Assembly (NCBI GenBank): GCA_977020255.1
Contig: CDROCS010006437.1
Location: forward strand, 1-64,000
DNA: 64,000 nucleotides
Origin: Obrimoposthia wandeli
Taxonomy: Eukaryota
Direction of reading: 5' to 3'
Part shown: positions 36,266 through 61,230 of the stretch, piece after piece
How the letters are laid out: each line of letters begins with the position of its first letter
Numbering within the stretch: the first letter of the stretch is position 1
Translations under genes and position numbers: made by a program
The notes under the pieces: generated by a model
The model's input: the letters and a program-made list of their open reading frames with translations, nothing else
Told to the model about the DNA's origin: nothing
Database searches by the model: none

Positions 36266-37552
36266 TTATTCTATAACTAGTTTTTTAACATTTCTACCTT
36301 CATCTGAATTTATTATTATAAAATAAACTCCAGCTTCCAAGTTTCTAGTTGATATTACATGTTTATTATCAATTAATCTAGATACTTGTTCAAAGTAAAC
36401 TTTTTGACCAATCATATTAGTCATAGTTATGTTAAATGTTCCAATACTCTTGTTGGTTAACTTTAATGTAATTTGTTTGATTGAAGAAGGGTTTGGATAT
36501 ATTGAAAACTCAATCTCCTCTACTTGATTAATACTAAGTGTTGATGTAACATTTACAGTTCTAATAACTTCATCGGCTGCATTTCCACTGGCATCTGCTA
36601 CATTGTATGTTACACTATAACTTCCTACTGCTGCTGTGTTTACTGCTGTGGAAACTATTGTTGCTGTTAAGCCTGTATCATAATTGTCTGAAACTGTAGC
36701 GCCAAGTTCTGTGTACGCTGTGCCTACTTCAATAACCTGTGGAGTTGCTCCATCTAAAGTAATCACTGGTTTTTCTGTATCTACTACATTTACCGTTCGT
36801 ACTACTTGTGTCGCTGCATTTCCACTGGCATCTGCTACATTGTATGTTACACTATAACTTCCTACTGCTGCTGTGTTTACCGCTGTGGAAACTATTGTTG
36901 CTGTTAAGCCTGTATCATAATTGTCTGAAACTGTAGCGCCTAGTTCTGTGTACGCTGTGCCTACTTCAATCACCTGTGGAGTTGCTCCATCTAAAGTAAT
37001 CACTGGTTTTTCTGTATCTACTACATTTACCGTTCGTATTTTCTGATCTGCAACGTTGCCATTGGCATCCGTTACATTGTAAGTAACACTGTAACTTCCT
37101 ACTGCTGCTGTGTTTACTGCTGTGGAAACTATTGTTGCTGTTAATCCAGTGTCATAATTGTCCGAAACTGTAGCCCCAAGTTCTGTGTACGCTGTGCCTA
37201 CTTCAATAACCTGTGGAGTTGCTCCATCTAAAGTAATCACTGGTTTTTCTGTATCTACTACATTTACCGTTCGTACTACTTGTGTCGCTGCATTTCCACT
37301 GGCATCTGCTACATTGTATGTTACACTATAACTTCCTACTGCTGCTGTGTTTACTGCTGTGGAAACTATTGTTGCTGTTAAGCCTGTATCGTAATTGTCT
37401 GAAACTGTAGCGCCAAGTTCTGTGTACGCTGTGCCTACTTCAATCACCTGTGGAGTTGCTCCATCTAAAGTAATCACTGGTTTTTCTGTATCTACTACAT
37501 TTACCGTTCGTACTACTTGTGTCGCTGCATTTCCACTGGCGGCATCTGCCAT
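36266..37552 (-). CDS. C-terminal fragment of the giant gene: four DUF5011-like Ig repeats + T9SS CTD
   Basis: [11 protein letters not shown]...VRTVNVV x4, then FSIYPNPSS...KKLVIE. Confidence 0.85.
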   Translation of the reverse strand: MADAASGNAATQVVRTVNVVDTEKPVITLDGATPQVIEVGTAYTELGATVSDNYDTGLTATIVSTAVNTAAVGSYSVTYNVADASGNAATQVVRTVNVVDTEKPVITLDGATPQVIEVGTAYTELGATVSDNYDTGLTATIVSTAVNTAAVGSYSVTYNVTDANGNVADQKIRTVNVVDTEKPVITLDGATPQVIEVGTAYTELGATVSDNYDTGLTATIVSTAVNTAAVGSYSVTYNVADASGNAATQVVRTVNVVDTEKPVITLDGATPQVIEVGTAYTELGATVSDNYDTGLTATIVSTAVNTAAVGSYSVTYNVADASGNAADEVIRTVNVTSTLSINQVEEIEFSIYPNPSSIKQITLKLTNKSIGTFNITMTNMIGQKVYFEQVSRLIDNKHVISTRNLEAGVYFIIINSDEGRNVKKLVIE

Positions 37553-40500
37553 ATGTTACTATAAATTCCTACTGCTGCTGTGTTTACTGCTGTGGAAACT
37601 ATTGTTGCTGTTAAGCCTGTATCATAATTGTCTGTAACTGTAGCGCCGTGTGTATGCTGTGTGCCTGTCTCCATCTGAAGTAATCACTGGTTTTTCTGTA
37701 TCTACAACATCATTTACCGTTCGTACTACTTGTGTCGCTGCTTACCACTGGCTACATTGTATGTTACCGCTATAACTTCCTACTGCTGCTGTGTTTTACT
37801 GCTGTGGAAACCATTGTTGCTGTTAAGCTGTATCATAATTGTCTGCTGAACTCTAGTTCTGTGGTATGCTGTGCCTACTTCAATCACCTGTGGAAAAAGT
37901 AATCACTGGTTTTTCTGTATCTACTACATTTACCATTCGGGTTACTTGGATCGCTGCATTACCACTAGCATCGGAAACATTGTATGTTACACTATAACTT
38001 CCTACAACTCCTAGGTTCACATCTGAAATATCAATCGTTGCTGATAAGCCTGTATCGTAATTGTCCGAAACTGTTGCGTTAAGTTCTGTATAACTTGTTC
38101 CTACTTCTATAATCTGTGGAATTGCTCCAGCATAGTTTTTCTGTTTTTCTGTATCTGCTACATTTACCGCGTACTACTTGTGTCGCTGCATTACCACTCG
38201 GCATCTGCTACATCATGTTACGCTGTCCTGCTGCTGTGTTTACTGCTGTGGAAACTATTGTTGCTGTTAATCCAGTGTCATAATTGTCTGAAACTGTCGC
38301 GCCAAGTTCTGTGTACGCTGTGCCTACTTCAATCACCTGTGGAGTTGCTCCATCTAAAGTAATCACTGGTTTTTCTGTATCTACTACATTTACCGTTCGT
38401 GTTACTTGTGTCGCTGCATTACCACTGGCATCTGCTACATTGTATGTTACACTATAACTTCCTACTGCTGCTGTGTTTACTGCTGTGGAAACTATTGTTG
38501 CTGTTAAGCCTGTATCGTAATTGTCCGAAACTGTTGCGCCAAAGTCTCTGTGTACGCTGTGCTTGTTCAATCACCTGTGGAGTTGCTCCATCTAAAGTAA
38601 TCACTGGTTTTTCTGTATCTACTACATTTACCGTTCGTGTTACTTGTGTCGCTGCATTACCACTGGCATCTGCTACATTGTATGTTACACTATAACTTCC
38701 TACTGCTGCTGTGTTTACTGCTGTGGAAACTATTGTTGCTGTTAATCCAGTGTCATAATTGTCTGAATGTAGCTCCATCTAAAGCCAGTTATTTCTGTAC
38801 TTCATAAATTCCTAACCTGTGGTATCACAATTGTCTGCTCCATCTAAAAATCACAATGTTTTTCGCTGGATCTACTACATTTACCGCGTGTTTATGCTGC
38901 TGTTTTTGCTGATAAACCTGTAAACTACTGCGTATGTCGCGCTACTTACCGCTGCATTTGTGGAAACTATTGTTGCTGTATAAGCCTGTATGTGGAGCGC
39001 AAACTTCCGCTGCCTGTTTCCGCACAAGTAATTATCTGTTCTGTACTACTTGTGTCGCTGCAACCACTGGCATCTGCTACATTGTATGTTACGCTATATT
39101 CCCTACTGCCGCTCCGCTAAACTATTGTTGCTGTTAAGCCTGTATCCAAACTGTAGCGCCTAGTTCTGTGTGTGTGGAGTTGCTCCTAAAGTAATCACTG
39201 GTCTGCAGTGTGTTACACCGGCATCTGCTACAATGTTACACTATAACACTGCTGCTGTGTTTACTGCTGTGGATATTGTTGCTGTTAAGCCTGTATCATA
39301 ATTGTCTTGAAACCGCCAAGTTCTGTGTTGTGCCTACTAATCACCTGTGGAGTTGCCCGTCCAGTTGCTCCATCTAAAGTAATCACTGTATCTACTACAT
39401 TTACCGTTCGCCATTTCCACTGGCATCTGCTACATTCTGCTGCTACGCTGCAAACCATTGCCTGTATCAGCTGTAGCGCCTAGTTCTGTGCATGCTGTGC
39501 CTGTGGAGTTGCTCCATCTAAAGTAATCACTGGTTTTTCTGTATCTTCTACATTTACCGTTCGTGTTACTTGTGTCGCTGCATTACCACTGGCATCTGCT
39601 ACATTGTATGTTACGCTATAACTTCCTACTGCTGCTGTGTTTACTGCTGTGGAAACTATTGTTGCTGTTAAGCCTGTATCATAATCTGAAACCAGCGCCA
39701 AGTTCTGTGTACGCTGTGCCTACTTCAATAACCTGTGGAGTTGCTCCATCTAAAGTAATCACTGGTTTTTCTGTATCTACTACATTTACCGTTCGTGTTA
39801 CTTGTGTCGCTGCATTTCCACTGGCATCTGCTACATTGTATGTTACACTATAACTTCCTACTGCTGCTGTGTTTACTGCTGTGGAAACTATTGTTGCTGT
39901 TAAGCCTGTATCATAATTGTCCCGTTCTGTGTAACTGTAGCGCCTAGCCTCGTGTAGTTCTGTGTATGCTGTGCTCATTTCAATCTTGTGGAGGAGTTGT
40001 TCTCCAGTCTGCTCCAAAAGTAATCACCACTGGTTTTTCTGTATCTTCACTACATTTACCGTTCGTGTTACTTGTGTCGCTGCATTTCCACTGGCATCTG
40101 CTACATTTGTGTCGCGCATGTTACGCCATATAACTTCCTACTGCTGCTGTGTTTACATTGTGCTTAAACTATTGTTGCTGTTAGCTATAACTTCCTACTG
40201 AAACTATGTGTTTGCCGCTGTGGATAATTCATTGTGTATCATAATTGAAACTGTTAAAGCTCTGTGTACGCCAATGTGCCTAACCTTCTGTGTACGCTGT
40301 GCCTATAACTGTGGAGTTGCAATCTGCTTCATCTAGTTGCTCAGTGTTTAAAGTAATCACCTGGTTTCCGGAAACTTAGCGCCCTGTGTACTGTATCTAC
40401 TCATTTTTGGTTTTTCTGTATCTACTACATTTACCGTTCGTGTTACTTGTGTCGCTGCATTACCACTGGCATCTGCTACATTGTATGTTACACTATAACT

Positions 40501-43500
40501 TCCTACTGCTGCTGTGTTTACTGCTGTGGAAACTATTGTTGCTGTTAAGCCTGTATCGTAATTGTCTGAAACTGTAGCGCCAAGTTCTGTGTACGCTGTG
40601 CCTACTTCAATCACCTGTGGAGTTGCTCCATCTAAAGTAATCACTGGTTTTTCTGTATCTACTACATTTACCGTTCGTACTACTTGTGTCGCTGCATTTC
40701 CACTGGCATCTGCTACATTGTATGTTACATTATAACTTCCTACAACTGCTGTGTTAACCGCTGTGGAAACTATTGTTACTGATAAGCCTGTATCGTAATT
40801 GTCTGAAACTGTAGCCCCAAGTTCTGTGTACGCTGTGCCTACTTCAATCACCTGTGGAGTTGCTCCATCTAAAGTAATCACTGGTTTTTCTGTATCTACT
40901 ACATTTACCGTTCGTGTTACTTGTGTCGCTGCATTTCCACTGGCATCTGCTACATTGTATGTTACACTATAACTTCCTACTACTGCAGTGTTTACTGAAG
41001 TGGAAACTATTGTTGCTGTTAAGCCTGTATCATAATTGTCTGAAACTGTAGCGCCAAGTTCTGTGTACGCTGTGCCTACTTCAATCACCTGTGGAGTTGC
41101 TCCATCTAAAGTAATCACTGGTTTTTCTGTATCTACTACATTTACCGTTCGTGTTACTTGTGTCGCTGCATTTCCACTGGCATCTGCTACATTGTTAGCA
41201 TTGTATGTTACTACACTTCCTCTTCCTACTGCTGCTGTGTTTACTGCTGTGGAAACTATTGTTGCTGTTAAGCCTGTATCATAATTGTCTGTAACTGTAG
41301 CCCTGCCTGTCCTCTATCAATAACTCCAGAGTTGCCCATCTAAAGCATGGTTTTTCTGTATCTACTAAGTTCTGTGTACTTGTGTCGCTGCATTTCCACT
41401 GGCATCTGCTACATTGTATGTTACTGTAACTTCCTACTGCTGCTGTGTTTATTTCAATTGCTGCTGTTAAGCCCGTATCATAATTGTTCGAAACTGTATC
41501 CTGCCCTGTGTACGCTGTGCCTAGCTCAGTCAAAGTAATCACTGTGAGCCCATCTAAAGTAATCACTGGTTTTTCTGTATCTACTACATTTACCGTTCGT
41601 TACAACATTTGCTCGTTCTGCATAGCTTCTACTGCTATATTACTAACTTCCTACTGCTGCTGTGTTTACCGAAGTGGAAACTATTGTTGCTGTTTCCGTT
41701 AGTGTGTAAATGCACTTATAACTGTGGAGTTGCTCCATCTAAAGTAATCACTGGTTTTTCTGGTACTACGTACATTTACCGTCTGTGTTCTTTCTAGCAT
41801 CTGCTACATTGTATGTTACGCTATAATCCTACTGCTGCTGTGTTTACTGCTGTGGAAACTATTGTCGTAATTGTCTGTGTCATAATTTTCACCTGAAACT
41901 GTAGCGCCAAGTTCTGTGTACGCTGTGCCTACTTCAATCACCTGTGGAGTTGCTCCATCTAAAGTAATCACTGGTTTTTCTGTATCTACTACATTTACCG
42001 TTCGTACTACTTGTGTCGCTGCATTACCACTGGCATCTGCTACATTGTATGTTACACTATAACTTCCTACTGCTGCTGTGTTTACTGCTGTGGAAACTAT
42101 TGTTGCTGTTAAGCCTGTATCGTAATTGTCCGAAACTGTTGCGCCTAGTTCTGTGTACGCTGTGCCTACTTCAATCACCTGTGGAGTTGCTCCAGTCAAA
42201 GTAATCACTGGTTTTTCTGTATCTACTACATTTACCGTTCGTACTACTTGTGTCGCTGCATTACCACTGGCATCTGCTACATTGTATGTTACACTATAAC
42301 TTCCTACTGCTGCTGTGTTTACTGCTGTGGAAACTATTGTTGCTGTTAAGCCTGTATCATAATTGTCTGTAACTGTAGCGCCAAGTTCTGTGTACGCTGT
42401 GCCTACTTCAATCACCTGTGGAGTTGCTCCATCTAAAAAGCCATCACTGGTTTCTGTATCTACTACATTTACCGTGTTACTTGTGTCGCTGCATTACCAC
42501 TGGCATCTGCCAAGCATTGTATGTTACACTATAACCTACTGCTGCTGTGTTTACTGCTGTGAAAACTATTGTTACAGCAGTTAATCTCTCGTGTACGCTA
42601 CTGTGTACGTGTACTGTGCCTACTTCCAATAATGGAGTTGCCCTGTTAAAAGTAATCACTGGTTTTCATGTATCTACTACATTGCCAGTTGCATTGCCAC
42701 TGGCATCTACTGCATTGTATTTACTATATTCCTGCGCGCTGTGTTTGCCACTGCTGTGAAACTATTGTTGCTGTTAGCCTGTATCGTAATTGTCTGAAAC
42801 TGTAGCATGGTTCTGTACGCTGTGCCTACTTCAATCACCTAATCACTGGTTTTTCTGTATCTACTACATTTACCGTTCTTTTCTTTGTATTCTGCATTTC
42901 CCTGGCATCTGCCATTGTATATTCCTATAACTTCCTACTGTAACTGTGTTTACCGCTGTACGAAACTATTGTTGCTGATAAGCCTGTATCGTAATTGTCG
43001 GCTTCGTGCGCCATTCTGTACGCTGTGCTAATACCTACTTCAATCACCTGTGGAGTTTGCTCCATCAAAGTAATCACTGGTTTTTCTGTATCTACTACAT
43101 ACATTTACCGTTCGTATTACTTGTGTCGCTGCATTACCACTGGCATCTGCGCACATTGTATGTTACACTATAACTTCCTACTGCTGCTGTGTTTACCGCT
43201 GTGGAAACTATTGTTGCTGTTAAGCCTGTATCATAATTGTCTGAAACTGTAGCGCCAAGTTCTGTGTACGCTGTGCCTACTTCAATAACCTGTGGAGTTG
43301 CTCCATCTAAAGTAATCACTGGTTTTTCTGTATCTACTACATTTACCGTTCGTGTTACTTGTGCCGCTGCATTTCCACTGGCATCTCTGCTACCATTGTA
43401 TGTTACATTATAACTTCCTACAACTGCTGTGTTAACCGCTGTGGAAACTATTGTTGCTGATAAGCCTGTATCGTAATTGTCCGAAACTGTTGCGTTAAGT

Positions 43501-45528
43501 TCTGTATAACTTGTTCCTACTTCTATTATCTGTGGAATTGCTCCTGTTAAAGTAATTACTGGTTTGGTTGTATCGACTACATTCACTGTTCGTGTTACTT
43601 GTGTCGCTGCATTTCCACTGGCATTGCTACATTACATATTTACGCTATCTCCTACTGCTGCTGTGTTAACCGCTGTGGAAACTATTGTTGCTGTTAAGCC
43701 TGTATCATAATTGTCTGCTTTGAAACTGTGGCGCGCCAAGTTTGTGTACGCTGTTGCCCCTGCTTCAATAACCTGTGGAGTTGCTCCATCCTAAAGTAAA
43801 TCACTAGGTTTTTCTGTATCATAATTGTTCGTGTACTACTTGTGCCGCTGCATTACTGTAGCGCCATCTGCTACTGTGTACGCTAATCCATGTTACTATA
43901 ACAACTCACCTGTGGAGTTGCTGCATCTAAAGTAATCACTGGCTTTTCTGTATCTACTACATTTACCGTTCGTGTTACTTGTGTCGCTGCATTTCCACTG
44001 GCATCTGCTACATTGTATGTTACGTATATATAACTCCCAAACTGTTGCCAAGTTCTGTGTACGCCTTTATTGCCTACTTCAATAACCTGTAGGTTATCTC
44101 CATCTAATCACTGGTTTTCTGTATCTACTACATTATACAAGTTCGTTGCCCTTCAACTGCATTACCACTAGCATCAGAAACATTGTATGTTACATTATAA
44201 CTTCCTACAACTGCTGTGTTAACCGCTGTGGAAACTATTGTTGCTGATAAGCCTGTATCGTAATTATCTGAAACTGCTTTTTCTTAAGTTCTGTGTACAC
44301 TGTACCTACTTCAATAACCTGTGGAGTTGCTCCAATCTGCTAATCACTGGTTTTCTGTATCTACTACATTTACCGTTCGTACCACTTGTGTCGCTGCATT
44401 ACCACTGGCATCTGCTGCATTGTATGTTACATATAACTTCCCTACTGCTGTGTTTACTGCTGTGGAAGCTATTGTTGCTGTTAATCCAGTGTCATAATTG
44501 TCTGAAGCTGTCTTTATGGTTCTGTAACATATGTACCTACTTCAATCACCTGTGGTGCTCCATCTAAAGTAATCACTGGTTTTTCTTATCTACTACATTT
44601 ACGTTCGTGTTACTTGTGTCGCTGCATTACCACTAGCATCACTAACATTGTATGTGTTTATAACTTTTCTACTATACTGTGTGAAACTATGTGCCTAATC
44701 AGTGTCATAATTGTCTGAAACTGTCGCATAAGTTCTGTGTACGCTGTGCCTACTTCAATCACCACCAATGAGTTGTATCTAAAGTAATCACTCGGTTTTG
44801 CAACATCTACTACATTTACCACTTGTTCGCTATTTCCTGATCTGCCGCTACTGCTGCTTGCTGTGTTTATGCATTGGCCAGGAAGCACTGTTGCTGTTAA
44901 GTACTGTAGCAATTGTCTGCACTGAACTGCTTTGGCGTCTTGCCGTAGCGGCCTAAGTTCTGTCTCACCACTTTGTATCTGAACTTCTACCCTAACTCTG
45001 CTTGCTAACCATCATCTAATGTACTTCTAAGAATGGTTTTCTGTATCTACTACATTTACCGTTCGTGTTACTTGTGTCGCTGCGCATTTCCACTGGCATG
45101 CTTACATTGTATGTTACGCTACTACTTTCCTACTGCTGTGTTTACTGCTGTAAACTATTGTCGCTGTTCAGCCTGTATCGTAATTGTCCGAAACTGTAGC
45201 CCCCAAGTTCTGTGTACGCTGTGCCTACTAATAACCTCTGTGGAGTTGCTCCATCTAAAGTAATCACTGGTTTTTCTGTATCTACTACATTTACCGTTCG
45301 TGTTACTTGTGTCGCTTTGCATTTACTGGCATCTGGTTTTACATTGTATGTTACGCTATAACTTCCTACTGCTGCTGTGTTTACCGCTGTGGAAACTATT
45401 GTTGCTGTTAGACCAATATCACAATTATCTGTAATACTAACACCCAACTCAGTATAACCTGAATTTACTTCTATAATTTGTGGAGTTGCTCCTGCCAACG
45501 TTATTACTGGTGAACTAGAATCCTCCAC
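36548..45528 (-). repeat. Tandem array of ~38-40 x 237-bp coding repeats (79-aa DUF5011-like Ig domain)
   Basis: Anchor CATCTAAAGTAATCACTGG at 36751 and 36988 (237 bp apart); about 40 PVITL-type anchors counted by hand up to 45500; clean and scrambled stretches alternate. Confidence 0.92.
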
Positions 45529-45529
45529 T

Positions 45530-45770
45530 GTAACAAGAGCTGAACATGTATCTGTTTGACTATTTGCATCAGTTACTGTTAATGTTACTGAAACTGGAGT
45601 TCCAATATTTGTACAGTTAAATGTATCAATATCTAAGCTATAATTTGTTATTGCAACATCATCTGTTGATCCATTATCAATTTGACTTGGTAAAATAGTT
45701 ACTGATCCACTATTGTCTAATTGTACTGTAATATTTTGGCATGAAGCAACGGGTGGAGATGAAGAATTGA
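45530..45770 (-). other. Ig/HYR-like domain coding segment missed by the ORF track
   Basis: Manual translation PPVASCQNITVQLDNSGSVTILPSQIDNGSTDDVAITNYSLDIDTFNCTNIGTPVSVTLTVTDANSQTDTCSALVTVEDSSSP, in frame with 45142..45528. Confidence 0.8.
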
Positions 45771-46398
45771 TTAAAATGATAATTCCCCACTGTATAATCT
45801 TCTAATCCTCCATCATAAATCTTTTTTAATTATATTTCCAACACTACTATGCGGGAATATTATTGTATCTCGCTGCAATTCTCATTTAGTATTATCCGTT
45901 ATCAGCAATTGAAGATGCACCAGCACACCATTATCAATACTAATTGATTAACTGGTGTAATACTTGTTTTTGGACATAGATTATCCAATAGTTACGGTGA
46001 AGTCTAGCATTAATTTCTGAAGATCAAAACTCCATTTCAAATATTAAATCCCATCCAAGCAGTCGCATGTCCAACATTTTTGCAACCAAAGACGTTTGAA
46101 AGATAATGTTTGGGGAAAGTATATTGATCCCTGGATTACAGTTGTTGACATTGCAATAAAATCTTGATAACCATTATTCTCTTTATTGTTGTGCATTGGA
46201 ATTATTAAAATACTTGTGTTCCAACCTGTATCAGAATTACCGCATTATCTCCCTCCCATAAACATTTTTCAAATAATTATCTCTGGTAGAACTAATACAG
46301 TTTGTGTGAAAATAGCGATGATGTTGTATATGCTGAAGTATTTGAAACACTACGCACGAGCGCACTTGTACCTTAATTTGATAATTCATGAAAAAGTG

Positions 46399-49071
46399 TT
46401 AAGCCCAGTTAAAGTGTGTTACTGTGGCTAAATTAGTCGTCAATACACCATCTGAAGAACCAACCACTCTATATCTTAAATCAGAAGTTGAAGAAGGAAT
46501 GTTATCCCAACCTATAGTAGCTTCTGAAGCATTAATTGATGAAGAGTTTAATCCTGCTGGTACACTTACTACACAAGGAATTTGAACGCCTATAATTTTA
46601 AAATCATCAATGAAAAATCCATCAGATGTTGTTGAATAATTTTCTGAAACATTGACTCCATCTGTCCTAAAATTAAATCTAATTTTAGCCGTACTTGAAT
46701 TAAGTAGAGAAAGGTAAGTATTGTCAATCGCGATTTCTTCCATCACCCAATTATCCATTCGATCACCATCGTAAATCTGACCAGAACTATTGGCTTGAAA
46801 ATTTGCGTAAGAACTACTTTTATTATCATGACTTGTAGTTGCACTAGTTGCGTTGGGCTTGGTATACTTCCCACTTAGTGATATCCAACTACTTCCACCA
46901 TCGGGTGAACCAAGAACTTCAACAAAATCATAATTTCTTTCAATATCCCATTTAGAATAAAATTGAATTAAAACTTCATTAGAATTAGAAAAATCATAAC
47001 TATTTGTAGTTGTTAATGTTTTTGTTGTATTATTAGAATATGTTCCCGTATTTAAAGAGTTATTATTAGAGTAAGCATCTGAAGTTGTATTGGTCCAACC
47101 ACCAGATTGTGTCCAACCTGTTAAGCCATTTGTATCTGGAATATGATCAAATAAAAGTGTAGGCTGATAATACTTCTCAAAATTCGCTTCATAAATATCA
47201 CCATTATCATTCGATAATTTAACATTATACTCTATTTTTTCATTAGCAGTGATCGTAGGATTTAATTGTAATGTACCAGTAACCTTTTTTTGCTCTAGAA
47301 CAGCTATGCCTGTTTGAGTTACAGGGGAAATAATACTTGAAATATTTGATGATATTGGTGTTATAGTAACAGTAAAATTACTAGCTGTTTGACCAACACG
47401 TTCAATACCGAAATCTAGGTTTGCTGTTGTACTTTCAATATTACTTTGAGTTAAGTCATGAAGTTTTGCATATTTCCCTCCATAATATGCAGTACCCAAA
47501 GAAATTCGCATAGACTGTTTTGCAATAGGAACTATAGTTGATGTAGAAGGCCAGAACGCTTCACTTCCATGCTCTGGTGTTGTACCTAGTATACCTTGCC
47601 CAGATCCAAAAGAACCATTAAGGTCTGCAACAGGGGGGTCTATACCATTATCGTAACTACCCGCCATCCAATCGTCAGGTAAACCATTAGATGAATAAAA
47701 TATAGTAGCTCCGTATAAATATCTATTATACCGTGTCATTTCTTCATGCCATCTATAAAACTCATCTTCTCTTCCTGATTTCTTGGTAGGAATACCACCA
47801 TAAGGATGTGGAACTGAGTTAGCAAAAGAGTGATTCCATACTGAAGTTTTAAAGTTTCGATTCAATATAAAATCTACCATTATCTGTGTTTCTGGTTCAG
47901 AAGCTCTACTTGGGCCTCTATAGGTTCCAGATGAAGCTGTTCCTGAAGAACCAACATTGTCATATCCCCAGAAATAATCAAAATTTCTATTCAAATCTAC
48001 ACCTCTATCGGGAGTAGTATTACTTGTACTACCAGTATTTGGTCTTAAATTTTTACGTTGGTATTGTCCTCCATCATCAACTAAACCATCTAAACGCGCA
48101 TCTAAGTGCTCATTCCATTTTAAACCATCAGGATTCACAACAGGAACAAAATATAATTCATTGTTATCTACCAATTCTTTAATTGCAGGATTGGTACTGT
48201 AGTTTTCAATAAGATACCACATAAAGTAAATGTTATTCATCAATGCACTTACCTCTCGTGAGTGTATCATAGATGTAAATAGCATTTGTGGTTTTGAATT
48301 TTCTGGAGTTCCACTTTGGTTTCCAGTTATTCTAACATACCAAATAGTTTCTGGGTTCCAAAATGTTTTACCGTCTCTATCTGGTTCATTTTCGAATGAA
48401 CTTGCGGTGCCTTGACCAGAATAGGTTAGACCATTATTAGTTGTTGAATTTGCGGGATTACCCCAAGTTGTTTGACCTGTAGAAGATGCACTTGCTTTTT
48501 GAGATACTATATTTAACCCGTTTGTTTGGGAATAGGTATACATGTCATCTAATTCAGATTTCATTTCACTAAATGTCAAACAGCCTTTCATACTCCCTAA
48601 ATTAAAATTATTAGGCAATACCCAGTCTACTTCGGCAACTCCACTATATTGCAGATAGTTATCCAATACAACACTCGTTATTGATGTTGGATTTTTGGCA
48701 CTAACTGTTGATTTTTTAGCTAATTTATTTTTTGCTTTTTCAGCCGCTAATTCTGCTTTAGCAATAGGTAACTCAATTGCTGCTCTTTCTGAATTATACT
48801 TCGCAAGGTCTTCAATTTCTACTGAATAAGTAATTTTTGCTTTGTTTAAACTTTCTAATTCAGATGAAGTAAGTTCCATAATTAAGCTATTATCTTCAAA
48901 AATAGCACCACAATGCAAATCAATACCTGCTTTTAGTAATTGAGTAATCTTTGATTCTGTAGGATTTTCAATTCTAACTCTTTTTCCTTTTGTATTGTCA
49001 AGAATTTTAGTTTGGGAAAAGACCAAAACTGTATTTAGCAATAAACATACTAATATAAGTTTAGCTTTCAT
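46399..49071 (-). CDS. M14 zinc carboxypeptidase (N-terminal part of the giant gene)
   Basis: Signal peptide; zinc ligands HSRE and NHSF; YQRKNLR; GVDLNRNF; catalytic Glu candidate in TPEHG; then a jelly-roll domain and the start of an FN3 domain that ends abruptly. Confidence 0.88.
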   Translation of the reverse strand: MKAKLILVCLLLNTVLVFSQTKILDNTKGKRVRIENPTESKITQLLKAGIDLHCGAIFEDNSLIMELTSSELESLNKAKITYSVEIEDLAKYNSERAAIELPIAKAELAAEKAKNKLAKKSTVSAKNPTSITSVVLDNYLQYSGVAEVDWVLPNNFNLGSMKGCLTFSEMKSELDDMYTYSQTNGLNIVSQKASASSTGQTTWGNPANSTTNNGLTYSGQGTASSFENEPDRDGKTFWNPETIWYVRITGNQSGTPENSKPQMLFTSMIHSREVSALMNNIYFMWYLIENYSTNPAIKELVDNNELYFVPVVNPDGLKWNEHLDARLDGLVDDGGQYQRKNLRPNTGSTSNTTPDRGVDLNRNFDYFWGYDNVGSSGTASSGTYRGPSRASEPETQIMVDFILNRNFKTSVWNHSFANSVPHPYGGIPTKKSGREDEFYRWHEEMTRYNRYLYGATIFYSSNGLPDDWMAGSYDNGIDPPVADLNGSFGSGQGILGTTPEHGSEAFWPSTSTIVPIAKQSMRISLGTAYYGGKYAKLHDLTQSNIESTTANLDFGIERVGQTASNFTVTITPISSNISSIISPVTQTGIAVLEQKKVTGTLQLNPTITANEKIEYNVKLSNDNGDIYEANFEKYYQPTLLFDHIPDTNGLTGWTQSGGWTNTTSDAYSNNNSLNTGTYSNNTTKTLTTTNSYDFSNSNEVLIQFYSKWDIERNYDFVEVLGSPDGGSSWISLSGKYTKPNATSATTSHDNKSSSYANFQANSSGQIYDGDRMDNWVMEEIAIDNTYLSLLNSSTAKIRFNFRTDGVNVSENYSTTSDGFFIDDFKIIGVQIPCVVSVPAGLNSSSINASEATIGWDNIPSSTSDLRYRVVGSSDGVLTTNLATVTHFNWA

Positions 49072-49117
49072 AATGTAGGGGTTTGGGGTTAAGTATTTTA
49101 ATTAATGTAATTTATGG

Positions 49118-52100
49118 TTATTCAAATATAATCTTTTTAGATAATTCACCTTTTTTTGTTGAAATTTTAACAACATAGACTCCTGTTATTGAGCTTATTG
49201 GTAAAGATAATTCTCTTCCTGATAAATTTCTATTCCAACTTTTAACGGTTTGTCCTAATATGTTAAAAATCTTTACCGATGCTATTTCTGCATTTATATT
49301 ATTTCTAATTTGCAATTCAGAAATAGCGTTATTCATAAATACGGAAATTCCGTTATTTAATATATCATCTTCAACACCTAGTGACTTTTGTGCCATAAAA
49401 ACTAAAGAAAATCTATCTAAATATTCTCCAGGGTCTAATGCTATTTCGAATGGGTTATTGCTAATATCAACAATATCACCTGTTAAATTATCTTTAATAA
49501 ATAAATTCATTTTGGAGTTTGTATTCTCCAATTCATCAATTTTTATTCTAGCTATTCCTGCAGTTTCAATTTTTAAGCCTAATAAAAACTCTTGATCTAC
49601 TCCAAAGTTATTAACTCCTTGAATTACAAACTTAGAATTACTAATAGACCAATACATATCCTCTTTATTAACATCAACAATAGGTGCATCATAGCCTAAA
49701 TCAAATCCATTGGTTGCATTTTCATCAAGTCCAATTACAATTTGTCTATGATATCCAGTTGGAGAATCAAACATCAATCTAATTTTGGATCTATTATCTA
49801 TTCGGGTTTTATTTTCTTCAGGAGAATTAGAGTTCTTAGATTTAGAATTCTTCATAAATACAGAATTTCCAACTGCCTCTCTTACAAAAACTCTTTGGCT
49901 ATTTTTAAAAGTAATGTCTCCACCTGATACAGTAGCAACTGTTGTTAATGCATTATCTACTTCAGTTGTTACTAAAAATGCTTGATTTACTGGAATATAC
50001 TGACCAGGTGTTTTTGTACCAACTGCTCCACTATTATTGATACGAATATCGTTTGATATTGCAGGAGCTCCTGCTGTTAAATTTCTTGTCGCATATCCTC
50101 CAACATAATCTGCCAAATAATGTGAATTTACTGGTCCAAAATGATCCCAAAAATAAATAGCTCCATTAAATACATTATTCCCACTCGCATGCCTTCCACT
50201 TAAATTATCCAATATAAATTCTCTCGAATCCATAGCTGAAGGATATGGGTTTCCAATTAACCTATTTTTTTCTTCAACAGATTTATCAAGTTCTAATAAA
50301 ATAGTTCCGTTATTTGGCTTTCCTCTAAATTTATAATTTTGAAATGTTCCAACAGTTACTGGACCTGAAGTTCCTTTCATAGTATACCCTTCTCCTGGTA
50401 ATAAAGTTGAATTCTCATCCATTGTTACCCAGGAGTTGTAATCATTAGCTGTTCCATAAAACTTAAACAACCAATAGGTACTAATCTTTCTTGGATTTGT
50501 AGGTGTGGCATCTGCATAAGTATACACAGGGTTAAAATCTAACCCTAATGGACTGCTAGTAGATGTACCATCCATAACATTTACTCCTAATGTAAAATTG
50601 TCATTAATGCTTGAAACTCCCAATCCTCTTGAAGTTTTTGAACTCGCACTAGAATTAACAGCCCCAACCGAAGAGGACCAATAATTATAATTAAAACTAT
50701 TTGCTGTCCCTTGTTGATCTTTATCTATATATCCACCACTATCCTGATCCAATACAGAACCTTCATCTTGTAATAACTGGGATTGACCTACTAAGTCTAT
50801 TTCGCCATCAATTTCTAAATAATGAGTTATTCTCAAACTTTGTCCATCATTATCTTCAATAGGAGTAGTTACTACTCCATCTGCAATAGTTATTTTTTCT
50901 GTTTTGTTTTTTAACCCTAATAAAGTAATATTTCTATCTCCTGAACTAATATCATGCTCTGTTTCTACAATATTCCAATCAATTGGAGTAGTATTATCTA
51001 CAATTGATAAACTATTTGTGTGTTTGGAACTTGTCATTTAACCAAGTTCCAGCCAATTCACCTACTCTGTTTTGATTTATATGTTTCTCATATAAATTAA
51101 AGAGCCGTTTGTCTATCTACTGTATTCAAATTTCTTAATGCACCTTGGTGTCCATTTCCTGATGCATCATTTGTATTTGTATAGGTGTAAACCGACATTG
51201 GATAATACCCTGCCAATTTGTTCCAAGGAACATTATCAATTTCATTTTTTGTAATTGCTTTAGGAACTACAGTTCCATTAACAAAGTTTCCATTATCTTC
51301 AATTTCTTGATTCATTACATATCTCAATTGATCAATTGAAAGAGCTGCATTCCAAACTCTAACCTCATCTATATTTCCTTTAAAATGAGCTTCAGGAGTA
51401 TTTTTACCTGCTGCAGCAATAAAAAATGATTGTGAATTTGAAGATGGGTTACTCAAAGAATTTACAGTTGAATCCAATATTCCATCAATATAAATATTTG
51501 CTGTACCTGAATTATAAATTACAGATACTTGGTGCCATTCATTTTCTGGAATTATTGTAGAAGATGTTATTATTTGGCTTCCTAAATTACCCCAAGACAT
51601 TTCTACTCTACCCGAATTATTAATTTTGGAAAATCTATCCTTCAGAATAACTCTTCTTTTTAGAAAGAATAGACGTTGATAAAGAACCTGCTTCTCTTTT
51701 TATCCAAGATGAAACCGTAAACTCAGAAGCATTTAAATCTAAGACATCTTCCATATCTACATAATCAACAATACCATCAAACTTTATTGATCGTACAACA
51801 ACCGTTTCCGGAGCATATCCAAAAGTGATATATTTAATACCATCAAAATCATAATCTGTATATAAATTCCCTCCTGTTTCAGTCATAACTCTATAATCTG
51901 ATGTTGGTGTAAAAACACCTGTTTCAGAAATAAACATTAAATAACTACCCGGAGGTGAAATATTTCTAACTGAGCTTTTAGGAATAGAGACTTTTACTTT
52001 TGGAATGTCGCCTCCATTTTCCTTTACTTTCCAAACACGCTGCATTCCTGTAAAATGAACATCAGTTATTAAAGCAGGTAAAATTTCTGAACTCATATTT

Positions 52101-55100
52101 ACACTAATTGTTGTGGCCGCAAGATTTAAATCTTTTCCATTATCCCCCCAAACTAAATATTGTTTATTGGCAAGAGTATTTACAGAATTTGTTGAAATAT
52201 TTTCACTATTTGTGGAATAAATATTAGTTAAACCAATAGTTAATATTCCTTGATCAACACCATTGTTTACACTTTTTGATTGTTTTTGATTTAATTCAGA
52301 AGCATCGTCTCTTCCAATACCTGCAATATCAAAATTAAATCCATCATTCACAGATTGATCCCAAATCAGGGTTCCATCAGAATCTACATAGTCTTGAGAT
52401 GTACCATTTACACCTAAAGTAATTCCATATTTAATTCCTAAATAAGATTGAATTCTATTACGCTCCGTTGTTAAATCAACATCATTTTTTGTTGAAGAAT
52501 AAGTTATAACCACAGCACTTCTACCATCAAAACTACCATTCCATAATTGAGATCTTCCTAACCAATATCTCGTATTATTTACTTGAGCAAAATCTGTAAT
52601 TTCAGAAGTACTAGTAGCTATTGATTTTGCATTTAAATATAAATTAACATCACTATTCGTATTATTATGTCTAACATTAATAATACCTATTTGATTGTAA
52701 TTATGTGTCCCTGATTTATCAGATTTTCCATATCCGTCATTTAAACCTCCTGTTGTCCCAATACAATATGTAAATATTTCATCATCAAATCGTTTAGTGA
52801 ATCCTCCATATCCAAAACCTGTTACATCTTCACTATATGTGTTACCACTTGCAGTTGGATCTGTACTTGTAAAGGTGTCTAAAGGAATCATAGAACTTGT
52901 TATTGTTGGATCTGGCATAATAACAACAAACATATCTGTACTATTAAAACCACCTGTTCCTTTTAACTCATCTCTTGATTCTAGATAGGTCATATCTTTT
53001 GAAGCTGTAGTATTATCATTTTCAAAATCAATCACAGGATTAAAGTTCATGTTTCGAGAAATGCTATTTCTATAAACTGGTTCCTGACCAGCAACAACTA
53101 CTTCAGCATGATTTCCTTTTCCATTATCTACCCATTTACTTACATTAGAACCATCAACTGCAATAGTTACTCCATCAACTTTATCTGCCTTTAACCATAA
53201 ATCCAAGTCTGCTGTGATACCTCCCGGAGCTTTTGTTGGAGTTGAAAAAGTAGTTCCAGTAATACTTATATTATCAATATAAATGATATCATCAACTTCA
53301 CCAGCATCGCATCTTACTCTAAATCTTGCTTCATTTGCTATAGGAAATGTATAATTTGTTTTAAATATAGTTGATGTTTTACTATAAAAAAATACTTCTG
53401 AATCAGTACTTTCAAAATCTCCATTTTTATCCACAATATCACCCGATTTAAATGTGTTGATTATTGACCAGGTTGCTCCATCATCGCTACTATATTCAAT
53501 GAAAAAATCATCGTTATTTTCCATGCTATATGCTGAAAAGAAAAACTTAAAATCAACTTTATCGTAGGCATTTAAACTCATTACAGGAGAACAAAATGAA
53601 GAAGCCTCATTAGAATTATCTCTTATTCTATAGCTATAATTACTCAAATATGACCAAGTAGAATCATTAATTCTTGTTGCGTCAGAACCTCCAGAGTTCC
53701 AACCATCAGTTCCTGTTTCAAAATCTTGAGTATATGGTAAAGCAATTATCGTACTACTGCACAAAATGAAATTGTATGCAGCAACAACAGTATCATTGTT
53801 TGCTATCGAAATTGTTGCTGTCTTAATTCCAGCTGATGTAGGATCAAAAGTAATTGTAAATGTTGTACTTCCTGAAGCAGATATTGGAGTTGTTGGGTTT
53901 GATGTTAAAGTAAATTCTGAAGTATCTCCAGTTATAATTATATAAGGACTTGCACTATTTAAAGTTAAATTGGCACTCCCTGTATTCTGAATTGTAAAAG
54001 TATTAGCTATAGTTCCTGAAGTTACCAATGCTGTTCCAAAATCAGTATCATCATTAGTTGATGGTGTTATATCTCCATTTGAAATACTATTTCCATTACC
54101 TACAATATTAATCTCAGGTTGTGGTGCTGCTGATTGAATATTTATGGTATAATCTTCTACTTCTCCATATCCAAAACTTTCACAAGATGATGAATTAGCA
54201 TTATACTTCATTGAAACACGCATTCTCGTATTTCCAGAAACTGCAGTAGCTGGAATGGTAAAGGATCCAGAAACGGATGCTGCAGTTGTTCTAGACCTCG
54301 AATAAACATTTTCTCCTGCATCTGTAAAATCACCATTCTTATTATAATCAATCCAAACATTATAAGCTTCACTAAAGGAACCACCTGTCCAGGTAGGTGT
54401 AATCGTTATTGGATAAATCGACCCAATAGTTAGATCTGTAGAAATTGATGTGAAATCCGAATATCCAGTACTTGTAGTTCCAATACCTGAGGCATTATCA
54501 ATTGTATTTAATTGAACTCTTCCAATAAATTCATCACTTGTACTGTTTCCATTAGAAGCACAATATCCTATAGCCAATACTGCGATTCTTGGAGATGATG
54601 TACAAATACCATTAGTAGCATCAACATAATATGTTGTTGTAGCAGATATTGTTGGTGTTGTAAAACTTGTTCCAGTTCCTAATGAGCTTCCTCCAGTAGA
54701 ACTAGAGTACCAATTAATTGTACCAGCTGATGCAATTGCTCCCAAAGTTGCTGTTCCAGCACCTGAAATAGAACCGTTTGTTGTACTATTAATTGTTGGT
54801 GTTGTTCCAGAGTTAATTGTTACAGTTTTAGATTCAATATTTGTAAAATTACCATCAGTTACACTTAATGACACCAAATAATTTCCATTAATTGAAGGGG
54901 TGAATGATGTTCCAGTTGTAGTCGCTAAATTATTAGCCAATGTACCAGTACTATTTCCAAATATAACATCAACAGAATTAGGATCAGTAACAGTCCATTC
55001 ATAACTTACATTAGTTGCTGCCCCTCCAAACATTCCTAATAAATTTATGTCTTGCCCTCCGCAACTAACAAAAGGACTGGTAGAAGGATTGGTAATTATT

Positions 55101-55675
55101 GCATTAATTGTACCACCACTAGCTACAACCTCACCAAAAGTTAGTACGGTACCTCCTCCACCTCTACAAACAGCGGTTAATTCTCCTCCTATATAAATTT
55201 CAGTATTATTTGAGCAACGACCAATAATATCACCTCCATTATCTATTTGAATTACAGAATTCGTTGGTAAATAAAGCTCAGTTTTATTATGTAAAAACCC
55301 CAAATCTCCTCCATTTAAATACAATAAAGGTGTATTTAAGGTTATTTGTAAGTTTTTTGTCCAACCTACATTTAGCCTTCCATTAACTACTACATTCCCC
55401 ATTGTTGAAGATGTAAAGTTCGTTCTTATATAAATTGTATCACCTGATAAAATTGTTACCGTATAAGACCCTGCATTTTGACCTGGATATGAAATGGCAG
55501 CTACCCAAGATGATCCGTTATAGGTTTCCCAAGAAGAAGATGTTTGCCAATCACCAGCAGTTGTTGAAGATCTAAAGTCTCCACTATTTTGGGCAAATAA
55601 AACTTGAGTAAATAATAAACTTACAGTTATGAAAAATAACTTATATAATTGTCTAGGGCTAGTTTTTTTAGTCAA
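49118..55675 (-). CDS. Large LamG-type T9SS protein (Ig_7-like, GEVED, choice-of-anchor-D-like Ig, jelly-roll, LamG, CTD), split into ORFs 51635..55732, 51097..51600 and 49118..51037
   Basis: Likely start TTG 55675 ([28 protein letters not shown]); GEVEDYT; LWLKAD; Lam[11 protein letters not shown]...WHQVSVIY...IDEVRVWN. Fragments are collinear with the intact paralog 56257..61119; garbled junctions near 51600-51660 and 51040-51100. Confidence 0.8.
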
Positions 55676-56099
55676 TGGATAGGGTTTAAAAAATGGGAGA
55701 AATATTATTGTATTGCAAATTAAAATGCACAACTATTTTAGATAAACTAAGTTTATCTATTTTATTATCAATTAAAAAAAATTGTTTTTGCTTAAGGGTT
55801 TTTCTTTTAAGCGTATTGAAAGATTTCAATAAAGAATTTAATACTGGGGCTAGCATATTTTATATTACTGAATTAGCTTAGGGTTCTCTAAAACAGTGGT
55901 ATAAAGCTAATTTAATTATGCATTTCTATTTTGCGAATTTTACAAAACCACCTCAAAAATATGCAAACTGTTAACTTTTGTCAATAAATGGTTTTATTTA
56001 TTTTTTAAAAATCTACCCATAATCAACAAATAAAGACTGAAAAGCATCTTTTTTGTAATTATTAACTCAATAGCGAAGCTAAAAATAACCATCTTCCAG

Positions 56100-61119: not shown

Positions 61120-61137
61120 ATATCTTAATATACGTTC

Positions 61138-61180
61138 CCAATGTACTTAAAATAAATGAATTACAACCAAATGAATTACA
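61138..61180 (-). promoter_or_regulatory. Promoter with an overlapping 12-bp direct repeat upstream of the LamG gene
   Basis: AAATGAATTACA at 61154-61165 and 61169-61180; minus-strand TTTG (61168-61171) and TACATTGG (61138-61145) resemble -33/-7 boxes. Confidence 0.5.
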
Positions 61181-61230
61181 TAATAACATAAATAAAAGGT
61201 TTGTTATATAATGTAATTGGTGAATAAGTG

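What the first reader, a model, noticed from the sequence alone, without database searches (positions are those of the whole stretch)
36266..49071. Giant 'enzyme-on-a-stalk': M14 carboxypeptidase carried on ~38-40 near-identical Ig repeats (~4270 aa, T9SS-exported)
Seen: the ORF track shows dozens of fragments, but the minus strand reads continuously as signal peptide, M14 catalytic domain with zinc and catalytic residues intact, jelly-roll, FN3, GEVED, HYR-like Ig, about 9 kb of 79-aa repeats, and a single CTD. Knowledge: T9SS cargo can be anchored to the surface at the C-terminus after CTD cleavage, and tandem Ig repeats form rigid extenders in repeat adhesins. Inference: the array could hold an exopeptidase on the order of 100+ nm from the cell (assuming about 4 nm per domain), beyond capsule or biofilm matrix. 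It would act as a particle-foraging or adhesin-tip enzyme. M14-T9SS proteins with a few DUF5011 repeats are familiar to me; a stalk this long is not.
Basis: partly seen in the sequence, partly recalled or inferred. Interest (0 to 1): 0.8.

Follow-up and report, generated by a model that had tools for sequence, protein, structure and literature searches.

The report
Giant repeat-stalk peptidase gene, garbled assembly
A marine-type Flavobacteriaceae bacterium appears to carry a very long gene for a secreted protein-trimming enzyme mounted on about 39 copies of one small domain. The middle 9 kb of the gene is written here in error-ridden letters, so its intactness and exact length remain unproven.

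Summary

It is not a continuous reading frame. Only the ends are open: 890 aa (49071-46402) and 428 aa (37552-36266). Between about 46425 and 37505 there are 543 indel events in the array alone. Clean stretches (1.6% difference, mostly third-codon positions) alternate with dirty ones (23% error, no codon bias). The unique GEVED segment is equally garbled.

The short-read run of the same sample holds 94% of the head's sampled words but only 7% of the garbled unique segment's. I therefore read the breaks as uncorrected long-read sequence, not gene decay. Repeat-unit word depth is 20-50 times the single-copy depth, which fits tens of copies.

Relatives share the roughly 1,100-aa head and carry other tandem arrays in the variable tail between head and CTD: 3, 4 or 6 MopE-like repeats within one 90% cluster, 16 HYR_4C domains, and relatives up to 3,316 aa.

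Verdict: probably a real gene, and the longest stalk seen here in a family with variable stalks. Interest is moderate to low.

The parts
36266..49071 (-). Whole locus: inferred single gene of about 4,300 codons for a T9SS-exported M14 carboxypeptidase with a DUF5011 repeat stalk. In this assembly it is broken into dozens of ORF fragments.
46402..49071 (-). Intact N-terminal ORF of 890 aa (the head). It is 76% identical to a 1,160-aa Lutibacter MAG homologue over its full length.
49012..49071 (-). N-terminal hydrophobic segment that looks like a signal peptide (first 20 codons).
   Evidence: read by eye; no signal-peptide predictor was run
47512..48348 (-). Peptidase_M14 domain (residues 242-520), nearest solved relative carboxypeptidase T. 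H270, E273, R339, N361, R362, H414 and E500 are invariant in 37 family heads.
46816..47031 (-). MAM-like jelly-roll (InhA-like_MAM partial match, residues 681-752).
   Evidence: 26.3 bits, just under the 26.9 cut-off; the same domain scores above cut-off in relatives
46399..46401 (-). Stop codon that ends the 890-aa ORF. It follows a frameshift at about 46425 inside the FN3 domain.
45802..46425 (-). Garbled unique segment: the end of FN3 plus the GEVED domain, recognisable only across frames. About 700 nt need at least 15 frameshifts and contain 7 stops; identity to the closest relative is 41% against 73% in the head.
   Evidence: absent from the same sample's short-read contigs
45512..45790 (-). 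HYR-like Ig domain, open in frame, 49% identical to the HYR region of the Lacinutrix homologue.
36549..45511 (-). Tandem array of a 237-nt (79-aa) PF16403/DUF5011 Ig-like unit: 38 full and 2 partial units, with clean and error-dense stretches alternating.
37505..46425 (-). Extent of the error-dense zone (with clean islands of 95-390 nt), read as uncorrected long-read sequence.
36266..37552 (-). Intact C-terminal ORF of 428 aa: the last 4.5 repeat units plus the CTD and the stop codon.
36272..36502 (-). T9SS type A C-terminal sorting domain (Por_Secre_tail / TIGR04183, residues 351-427 of the 428-aa piece).

Best explanation
The locus is most likely one real gene of a Flavobacteriaceae bacterium. 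By the head, the nearest relatives found are an unnamed Flavobacteriales metagenome cluster and a Lutibacter MAG. The gene encodes a protein of about 4,300 aa with this order: Sec signal, N-terminal region, CPT-like M14 zinc carboxypeptidase, MAM-like jelly-roll, FN3, GEVED, HYR-like domain, about 39 tandem 79-aa DUF5011 Ig-like domains, and a type A T9SS C-terminal domain.

Its fragmentation in this window is most likely technical. The interval from about 46425 to 37505 looks like poorly corrected single-molecule read sequence. Short-read polishing repaired it only in islands, which fits the repeats being unmappable and the local draft error too high.

Inferred mechanism, not shown here. The protein crosses the inner membrane by Sec and the outer membrane by the T9SS. 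The CTD is removed and the new C-terminus is probably tied to the cell surface. The short-linkered Ig-like domains then form a fibre of the order of 100-150 nm, which presents the N-terminal carboxypeptidase and its binding-type domains away from the cell, for example to particles or to a host surface.

Across the family the roughly 1,100-aa head is conserved. The tail between head and CTD carries lineage-specific tandem arrays of unrelated units, and the copy number varies even among near-identical proteins. This suggests the stalk, or its length, is the variable trait.
For: Domains and order. The catalytic set is invariant in 37 heads.

Noise rather than decay:
- 543 indel events in 9 kb, 497 of them frame-breaking, with no homopolymer bias.
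- Dirty zones have 23% error, with mismatches at 213 of 237 unit positions and no strong codon bias (182/195/269). Clean zones differ by 1.6%, with 26 of 39 differences at third codon positions and at recurrent sites.
- Both ends, and nearly all other genes of the window, are long clean ORFs.
- The unique GEVED segment is just as garbled.
- Run X1 from the same sample holds 0.94 of the head's sampled words but 0.07 of the words of 45805-46425. No contig of any of the three runs lies on 45810-46337 even at 80% likeness.

Copy number: the array length gives 38-39 units. Summed word depth on a repeat unit is 220-506 in X1 against about 10 for exact single-copy contigs, and 50-61 against about 3 in X6.

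Family: the core is about 1,140 aa, and relatives reach 3,316 aa. P0005 carries 16 HYR_4C domains. P0001, P0157 and P0156 differ only by having 3, 4 or 6 repeats. Ten of 41 genome contigs end inside the gene, six of them in or at tandem repeats.

Literature: assembly frameshifts in repetitive giant adhesin genes, even in long-read assemblies (bioRxiv 10.1101/2025.09.30.679566); A-LPS anchoring of T9SS cargo including the M14 enzyme CPG70 (PMC5445135).
Against: - No read or contig spanning the array was seen. The tool itself warns that summed contig depth is not a copy number and that a hole in coverage proves nothing.
- The sample is a mixture containing related strains (contigs at 85-90% likeness), which can inflate repeat depth.
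- The true sequence could still hold one or a few real disabling mutations hidden under the noise.
- Polishing with multi-mapped reads may have made the clean units look more alike than they are.
- It is unexplained why a unique 600-nt segment stayed uncorrected while the adjacent HYR segment is clean.
- Surface anchoring, fibre rigidity, reach and enzymatic activity are untested. A carboxypeptidase held about 140 nm from the cell would release its products far from the cell's transporters, which argues against a simple nutrient-capture role.
- The single-sequence AlphaFold model of the repeat piece was unusable (pLDDT 37.6).
Confidence: 0.7

Rival explanations
1. Real pseudogene: the array and the FN3/GEVED segment have truly decayed in the organism, so no giant protein is made.
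For: As written, the sequence has a stop at 46401-46399 and dozens of frame breaks. No spanning accurate read was examined.
Against: - A density of about one indel event per 17 nt, flanked by perfectly open 890-aa and 428-aa ends, does not resemble gene decay.
- Clean units show synonymous-biased differences.
- The same sample's short-read contigs hold 94% of the head's words but only 7% of the garbled unique zone's. A real pseudogene would be present letter for letter.
Confidence: 0.05
2. The gene is real but the array length is an assembly artefact. The true copy number would be far from 39 (a few units, or many more) because the array was expanded, collapsed or mis-joined.
For: - The interior appears to rest on very few noisy reads.
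- Tandem arrays of near-identical units are the classic site of mis-sizing.
- Depth ratios range widely, from 17 to 50, and are formally not copy numbers.
Against: - Two independent rough estimates agree on tens of copies: 38-39 units from array length, and word-depth ratios of 22-50 (X1) and 17-20 (X6).
- At least two unit subtypes are spread along the array, and a two-unit (474-nt) period is seen near its 3' end. A simple expansion artefact would not be expected to produce this.
Confidence: 0.15
3. Chimeric join of two genes: an ordinary M14 enzyme of about 1,150 aa (head, GEVED, own CTD) and a separate DUF5011 repeat adhesin, fused by the assembler.
For: The closest complete genomic homologue (L001, 1,160 aa) goes straight from GEVED to CTD and has no array. 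The junction zone is the noisiest part.
Against: - The GEVED remnant ends about 10 codons before the HYR-like domain starts, in the same orientation, which leaves no room for a CTD or an intergenic region.
- Several relatives have head, HYR domain and then a tandem array in one clean ORF.
Confidence: 0.05
4. Functional rival, assuming the same gene: the array is not a passive spacer but the working part. It would act as a multivalent adhesin or matrix-binding fibre, or as a variable surface array, with the peptidase as accessory or processing module. Alternatively the protein is shed rather than anchored.
For: - The head also carries binding-type domains (MAM-like, FN3, GEVED, HYR).
- HYR and DUF5011 domains are typical of surface and adhesion proteins by their Pfam descriptions.
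- Copy-number variation among near-identical relatives resembles variable surface proteins.
- Product capture at about 140 nm from the cell would be poor.
Against: The stalk units are of unrelated types in different lineages: DUF5011, HYR_4C, MopE-like and 27-33-aa Cys repeats. That is easier to explain by selection on length or presentation than on one binding specificity. Nothing here tests binding.
Confidence: 0.3

Closest known systems
Uncharacterised Flavobacteriaceae 'M14 family zinc carboxypeptidase' T9SS proteins (e.g. WP_344788483.1 of Postechiella marina, 2,322 aa; Lutibacter, Winogradskyella, Olleya, Psychroserpens and Lacinutrix homologues)
   Same: - The head is orthologous at 51-77% identity for 40 of the 41 genome loci (one locus 40%) over about 880 aa. 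It has the same order, signal peptide, M14, MAM-like, FN3, then GEVED or MAM+HYR, and ends in a type A CTD.
- Many carry tandem arrays in the tail between head and CTD.
   Different: - Lengths found were 1,130-3,316 aa.
- None of the relatives I domain-scanned or repeat-searched had a long DUF5011 array. A search with the window's own unit hit at most 2 domains in any genome homologue, and the longest array I counted was 16 HYR_4C.
- Here there are about 39 DUF5011 units and about 4,300 aa.
CPG70 (PG0232) of Porphyromonas gingivalis
   Same: An M14 metallocarboxypeptidase that is itself T9SS cargo with Ig-like (PKD) domains and a CTD, and is held on the surface through A-LPS (PMC5445135).
   Different: - CPG70 is short, with a few PKD domains and no tandem near-identical array.
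- It trims C-terminal Arg/Lys of gingipains.
- No sequence comparison with it was made here, and the head's nearest solved relative is carboxypeptidase T.
Extender regions of giant RTX adhesins (e.g. MpIBP/MpAFP of Marinomonas primoryensis, about 120 identical 104-aa Ig-like repeats)
   Same: Tens of near-identical tandem beta-sandwich domains are thought to project a functional tip away from the cell. Their genes are regularly broken or mis-sized in assemblies (PMC4083281, PMC7493085, bioRxiv 10.1101/2025.09.30.679566).
   Different: - Those proteins are T1SS substrates, with C-terminal RTX signals, an N-terminal anchor and C-terminal ligand-binding tips.
- Here the polarity is reversed (N-terminal tip, C-terminal T9SS CTD).
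- The tip is an enzyme.
- No Ca2+ dependence is known for this unit.
Giant T9SS surface proteins of gliding Bacteroidota (SprB and RemA of Flavobacterium johnsoniae)
   Same: Very large repetitive surface proteins exported by the T9SS. From my own knowledge SprB is about 6,500 aa, so the size is within the system's capacity.
   Different: SprB and RemA are motility adhesins without a peptidase domain. From my own knowledge SprB has a type B CTD, whereas this protein matches the type A model.

Membership tests
Peptidase family M14 (zinc carboxypeptidases, CPA/CPT-like) | Match to the family profile above its curated cut-off | tested here: met
   PF00246 at 134 bits (cut-off 21.6), residues 242-520. 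Carboxypeptidase T chains match at E 1e-24.
Peptidase family M14 (zinc carboxypeptidases, CPA/CPT-like) | Zinc ligands HxxE plus a distal His, substrate-anchoring Arg and Asn-Arg, and the catalytic Glu | tested here: met
   H270/E273, R339, N361/R362 and H414 align to the CPT residues. E500 lies in a TPE motif. All are invariant in 37 family heads. The Tyr248 equivalent is present in the window but not invariant.
T9SS type A cargo | C-terminal sorting domain (TIGR04183 / PF18962) at the extreme C-terminus | tested here: met
   TIGR04183 at 40.4 bits (cut-off 23) and PF18962 at 46.3 bits (cut-off 27), residues 351-427 of the last 428-aa ORF.
T9SS type A cargo | Sec signal peptide and CTD on the same polypeptide | tested here: inconclusive
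   A signal-like N-terminus and a CTD lie at the two ends. The 9 kb between them is not an open frame in this assembly.
T9SS type A cargo | T9SS machinery in the same genome; CTD cleavage and surface attachment | not tested
   No T9SS component gene was seen among the window ORFs I scanned. Other CTD-bearing proteins lie nearby. Cleavage and anchoring need experiments.
DUF5011 / Bact_surface_Ig-like (PF16403) repeat proteins | Profile match of the repeat unit | tested here: met
   PF16403 at E 2e-63 (4 stretches) in the C-terminal piece, and at 4e-51, 9e-37 and 5e-13 in three interior clean pieces. There is also a weak match to the solved Ig-like domain 2KPN.
Intact protein-coding gene (as opposed to a pseudogene) | One uninterrupted reading frame from start to stop | tested here: not met
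   There are 47 stop-to-stop segments of 40 aa or more over three frames and 497 frame-breaking indel events in the array. I judge this technical, but that is not proven.
RTX (T1SS) fibrillar adhesins | C-terminal RTX nonapeptide repeats and a T1SS signal; N-terminal retention module | tested here: not met
   Pfam and NCBIfam scans of the C-terminal piece give a T9SS CTD and no RTX repeat family. The weak LapB_rpt_80 match reflects only the repeat type. This protein is an analogue, not a member.

The most novel reading that the evidence does not exclude
Behind a conserved M14 'head' of about 1,100 aa, the tail between head and CTD is a hot spot. Different Flavobacteriaceae lineages have there independently grown tandem arrays of unrelated units: DUF5011 x ~39 here, HYR_4C x 16, MopE-like x 3-6, and 27-33-aa Cys repeats. 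Copy number varies even within one 90%-identity cluster. On this reading, selection acts on the reach or length of an enzyme-tipped surface fibre and not on the identity of the repeat. The window's gene would be the extreme case: a functional carboxypeptidase of roughly 450 kDa (my estimate) held about 140 nm from the cell.
Probability: 0.3. Interest if true: 0.55.

Novelty: new variant of a known kind. Interest (0 to 1): 0.3.

Why it matters
If the gene is intact, it would be an unusually long enzyme-tipped T9SS surface fibre. It would also be a convenient natural series for asking whether stalk length tunes how surface enzymes of marine Flavobacteriaceae reach particles or host surfaces, because the same head occurs on stalks of very different length and type.

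In practical terms it is a warning. The 9 kb interior of this locus cannot be trusted letter by letter. Annotation pipelines will call it a string of pseudogene fragments. Short-read assemblies of relatives break in or at repeat arrays of this gene, so the family's true size range is probably underestimated in databases.

Tried and rejected
- Single-sequence AlphaFold2 of the 428-aa C-terminal piece gave pLDDT 37.6. It was unusable, so no fold search was made.
- An exact 29-nt repeat core found nothing in metagenome contigs. A protein-guided scan with the C-terminal piece found only two unrelated DUF5011 proteins at about 50% identity. No better copy of this gene was found.
- The genome-contig scan returned relatives at 77% identity or less and no second copy of this species.
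- Read laying could be used only once, and I kept it off the array. It shows depth and the absence of contigs, but no spanning record.
- Homopolymer-linked error was considered and not supported. One-nt deletions follow the base composition of the unit.
- A diversity-generating or contingency mechanism was considered and rejected. The changes are random indels and mismatches at nearly all positions, not targeted substitutions or simple-sequence slippage.
- The earlier-findings index held nothing for this place or for these words.
- Literature searches for DUF5011 with T9SS, or for carboxypeptidase with tandem repeats in Flavobacteriia, found no paper on this family.


Full report
**What is in the sequence**

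On the minus strand of 36266-49071 only two long ORFs exist: 49071-46399 (890 aa) and 37552-36266 (428 aa). Between them the three frames hold dozens of short open segments; counting the two end ORFs there are 47 segments of 40 aa or more across the whole locus.

The 890-aa piece starts with a hydrophobic segment that looks like a signal peptide. It contains Peptidase_M14 (134 bits, residues 242-520) and a MAM-like jelly-roll. Its closest solved relatives are carboxypeptidase T chains (E 1e-24). The zinc ligands HxxE and His, the substrate-binding Arg and Asn-Arg, and the catalytic Glu are present and invariant across 37 family heads.

The 428-aa piece is 4.5 copies of a PF16403 (DUF5011, 'bacterial surface Ig-like') unit followed by a T9SS type A sorting domain (PF18962, TIGR04183). 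Interior open pieces are also PF16403 repeats.

**The array**

Tandem Repeats Finder, nhmmer and a wraparound alignment against a consensus built from clean copies agree. A 237-nt (79-aa) unit fills 45511-36549 as 38 full and 2 partial units. The unit occurs nowhere else in the window.

Upstream of the array, 45790-45512 is an open HYR-like domain, 49% identical to the HYR region of a Lacinutrix homologue. The segment 46425-45802 is the end of FN3 plus a GEVED domain, but it is readable only with a frameshift-aware alignment. Motifs typical of relatives appear in different frames. About 700 nt need at least 15 frameshifts and contain 7 stops, and identity to the closest relative falls to 41% from 73% in the head. 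No independent start or gene follows it.

The statement that the strand reads continuously is not correct.

**Why the breaks look technical**

- Relative to its own consensus the array has 685 mismatches and 543 indel events, of which 497 are not multiples of three. There is no homopolymer preference.
- Errors are not spread evenly. Clean stretches of 95-390 nt differ from the consensus by 1.6%, with 26 of 39 differences at third codon positions and at recurrent sites. That is the signature of real, selected variation between units.
- Dirty stretches differ by 23% per column. Their mismatches fall on 213 of 237 positions with almost no codon bias.
- The rest of the window is densely packed with long clean ORFs.
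- Such an error level is that of raw single-molecule reads, not gene decay.
- A direct test points the same way. Run X1, from the sample that also yields exact contigs on the head, holds 0.94 of the sampled 31-mers of 46402-49071 but only 0.07 of those of the garbled unique segment 45805-46425.
- No contig of X1, X6 or X21 lies on 45810-46337 even at 80% likeness. A true pseudogene would be present in the reads letter for letter.
- The literature describes exactly this problem for repetitive giant adhesin genes, even in long-read assemblies (bioRxiv 10.1101/2025.09.30.679566).
- One more probable frameshift sits in a neighbouring gene, so residual indel errors exist outside the array too.
- Earlier notes of this scan report LTR elements and a gammaproteobacterial locus on other pieces of the same assembly. 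The contig therefore seems to come from a mixed host-plus-bacteria assembly in which this bacterium has low coverage: about 10x word depth in X1.

**Copy number**

The array length gives 37.8 units as written and about 38.9 after allowing for the net deletion bias. Independently, summed word depth on the first full unit is 220-331 per bin (up to 506 at single positions) in X1, against about 10 for the exact single-copy contigs. In X6 it is 50-61 against about 3. The tool warns that such sums are not copy numbers, and related strains are present. The two lines together still support tens of copies. No spanning accurate read was seen.

**Family context**

A scan of species-representative genomes found 41 loci with the same head, in Lutibacter, Winogradskyella, Olleya, Psychroserpens, Lacinutrix and others. 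Identity is 51-77% for 40 of them and 40% for one.

- The common core is signal peptide, M14, MAM-like domain, FN3, GEVED, CTD, at about 1,140 aa.
- Ten of the 41 contigs end inside the gene. Six of those end in or at tandem arrays of other unit types: 27-33-aa Cys-containing repeats and MopE-like repeats of about 50 aa.
- An exhaustive profile search found 789 relatives at E up to 1e-30. Most of the best 150 are 780-1,760 aa, with outliers of 2,308, 2,589, 2,718 and 3,316 aa.
- The 2,589-aa relative carries 16 HYR_4C domains before its CTD.
- In the closest cluster (73% identity to the window's head), three members are the same protein apart from having 3, 4 or 6 MopE-like repeats (1,304, 1,354 and 1,456 aa). 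The other five members are shorter, and the four with names are annotated as partial on short contigs.

The tail between head and CTD is thus a place where arrays of different units expand and vary. The window's 39 DUF5011 units are the longest case seen here, but they belong to a pattern.

**How it probably works (inference)**

By analogy with T9SS type A cargo, including the M14 enzyme CPG70 of P. gingivalis, the CTD directs outer-membrane export. It is then cleaved and the cargo is attached to the surface (PMC5445135, PMC8545088). The array would then be proximal and the N-terminal head distal.

The units follow each other without Ser/Thr/Pro-rich linkers, as in the extender regions of RTX adhesins (PMC4083281, PMC7493085). 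At an assumed 3.5-4 nm per domain the stalk would reach about 135-155 nm.

It is not known whether the stalk is a passive spacer, a binding fibre or a variable surface structure. A carboxypeptidase that far from the cell would feed the cell poorly, which favours action on particles or surfaces, or an adhesin-like role, over simple nutrient capture.

**Verdict**

This is a new, extreme variant of a known kind (multidomain T9SS M14 peptidases; repeat-extended surface proteins). I put about 0.7 on a real, intact gene whose interior is mis-written here. Interest is 0.3.

Noticed in passing
window 51100-55732 (- strand), break at about 51640-51700: A 1,365-aa ORF (Ig_7, GEVED) ends inside what looks like the start of a Laminin_G_3 domain. 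The next ORF (51600-51100) continues that domain from profile position 64 in another frame. This is probably a single frameshift, either an assembly error or real. The 639-aa ORF downstream (51037-49118) carries the T9SS CTD, so the three may be pieces of one secreted protein of about 2,200 aa.
   Followed up: partly
window 18033-23261 (+ strand): An intact 1,742-aa T9SS cargo: a reprolysin-like M12B metallopeptidase with four FN3, two GEVED and a Por_Secre_tail CTD. It is another multidomain secreted peptidase of the same bacterium.
   Followed up: no
window 56257-63684 (- strand): A 1,620-aa Laminin_G_3 protein and a TonB-dependent receptor (Plug plus barrel) lie upstream on the same strand as the M14 gene, forming a run of large secreted or surface proteins.
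   Followed up: no
L010, L012, L009, L041 (Psychroserpens, Olleya, Dokdonia homologues), last 100-300 codons before the contig end: After the HYR domain these orthologues enter tandem arrays of 27-33-aa Cys-containing repeats. Neither homologue I scanned (L010, L012) gave a Pfam match there at E 1e-4, and the contigs stop inside the arrays, so their true length is unknown.
   Followed up: partly
P0001 / P0157 / P0156 (one 90%-identity cluster of metagenomic proteins): These are the same protein with 3, 4 or 6 MopE-like repeats of about 50 aa between GEVED and the CTD. This is either natural copy-number variation or collapse of repeats in short-read assemblies.
   Followed up: partly
runs X1, X6, X21 laid on window 45150-49100: The sample holds at least one related strain or species: contigs at 85-90% likeness on the head, word depth about 6, beside exact contigs at depth about 10. 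All three runs have 7-9 million very short Logan contigs, so the source is a complex mixture and not a pure culture.
   Followed up: no
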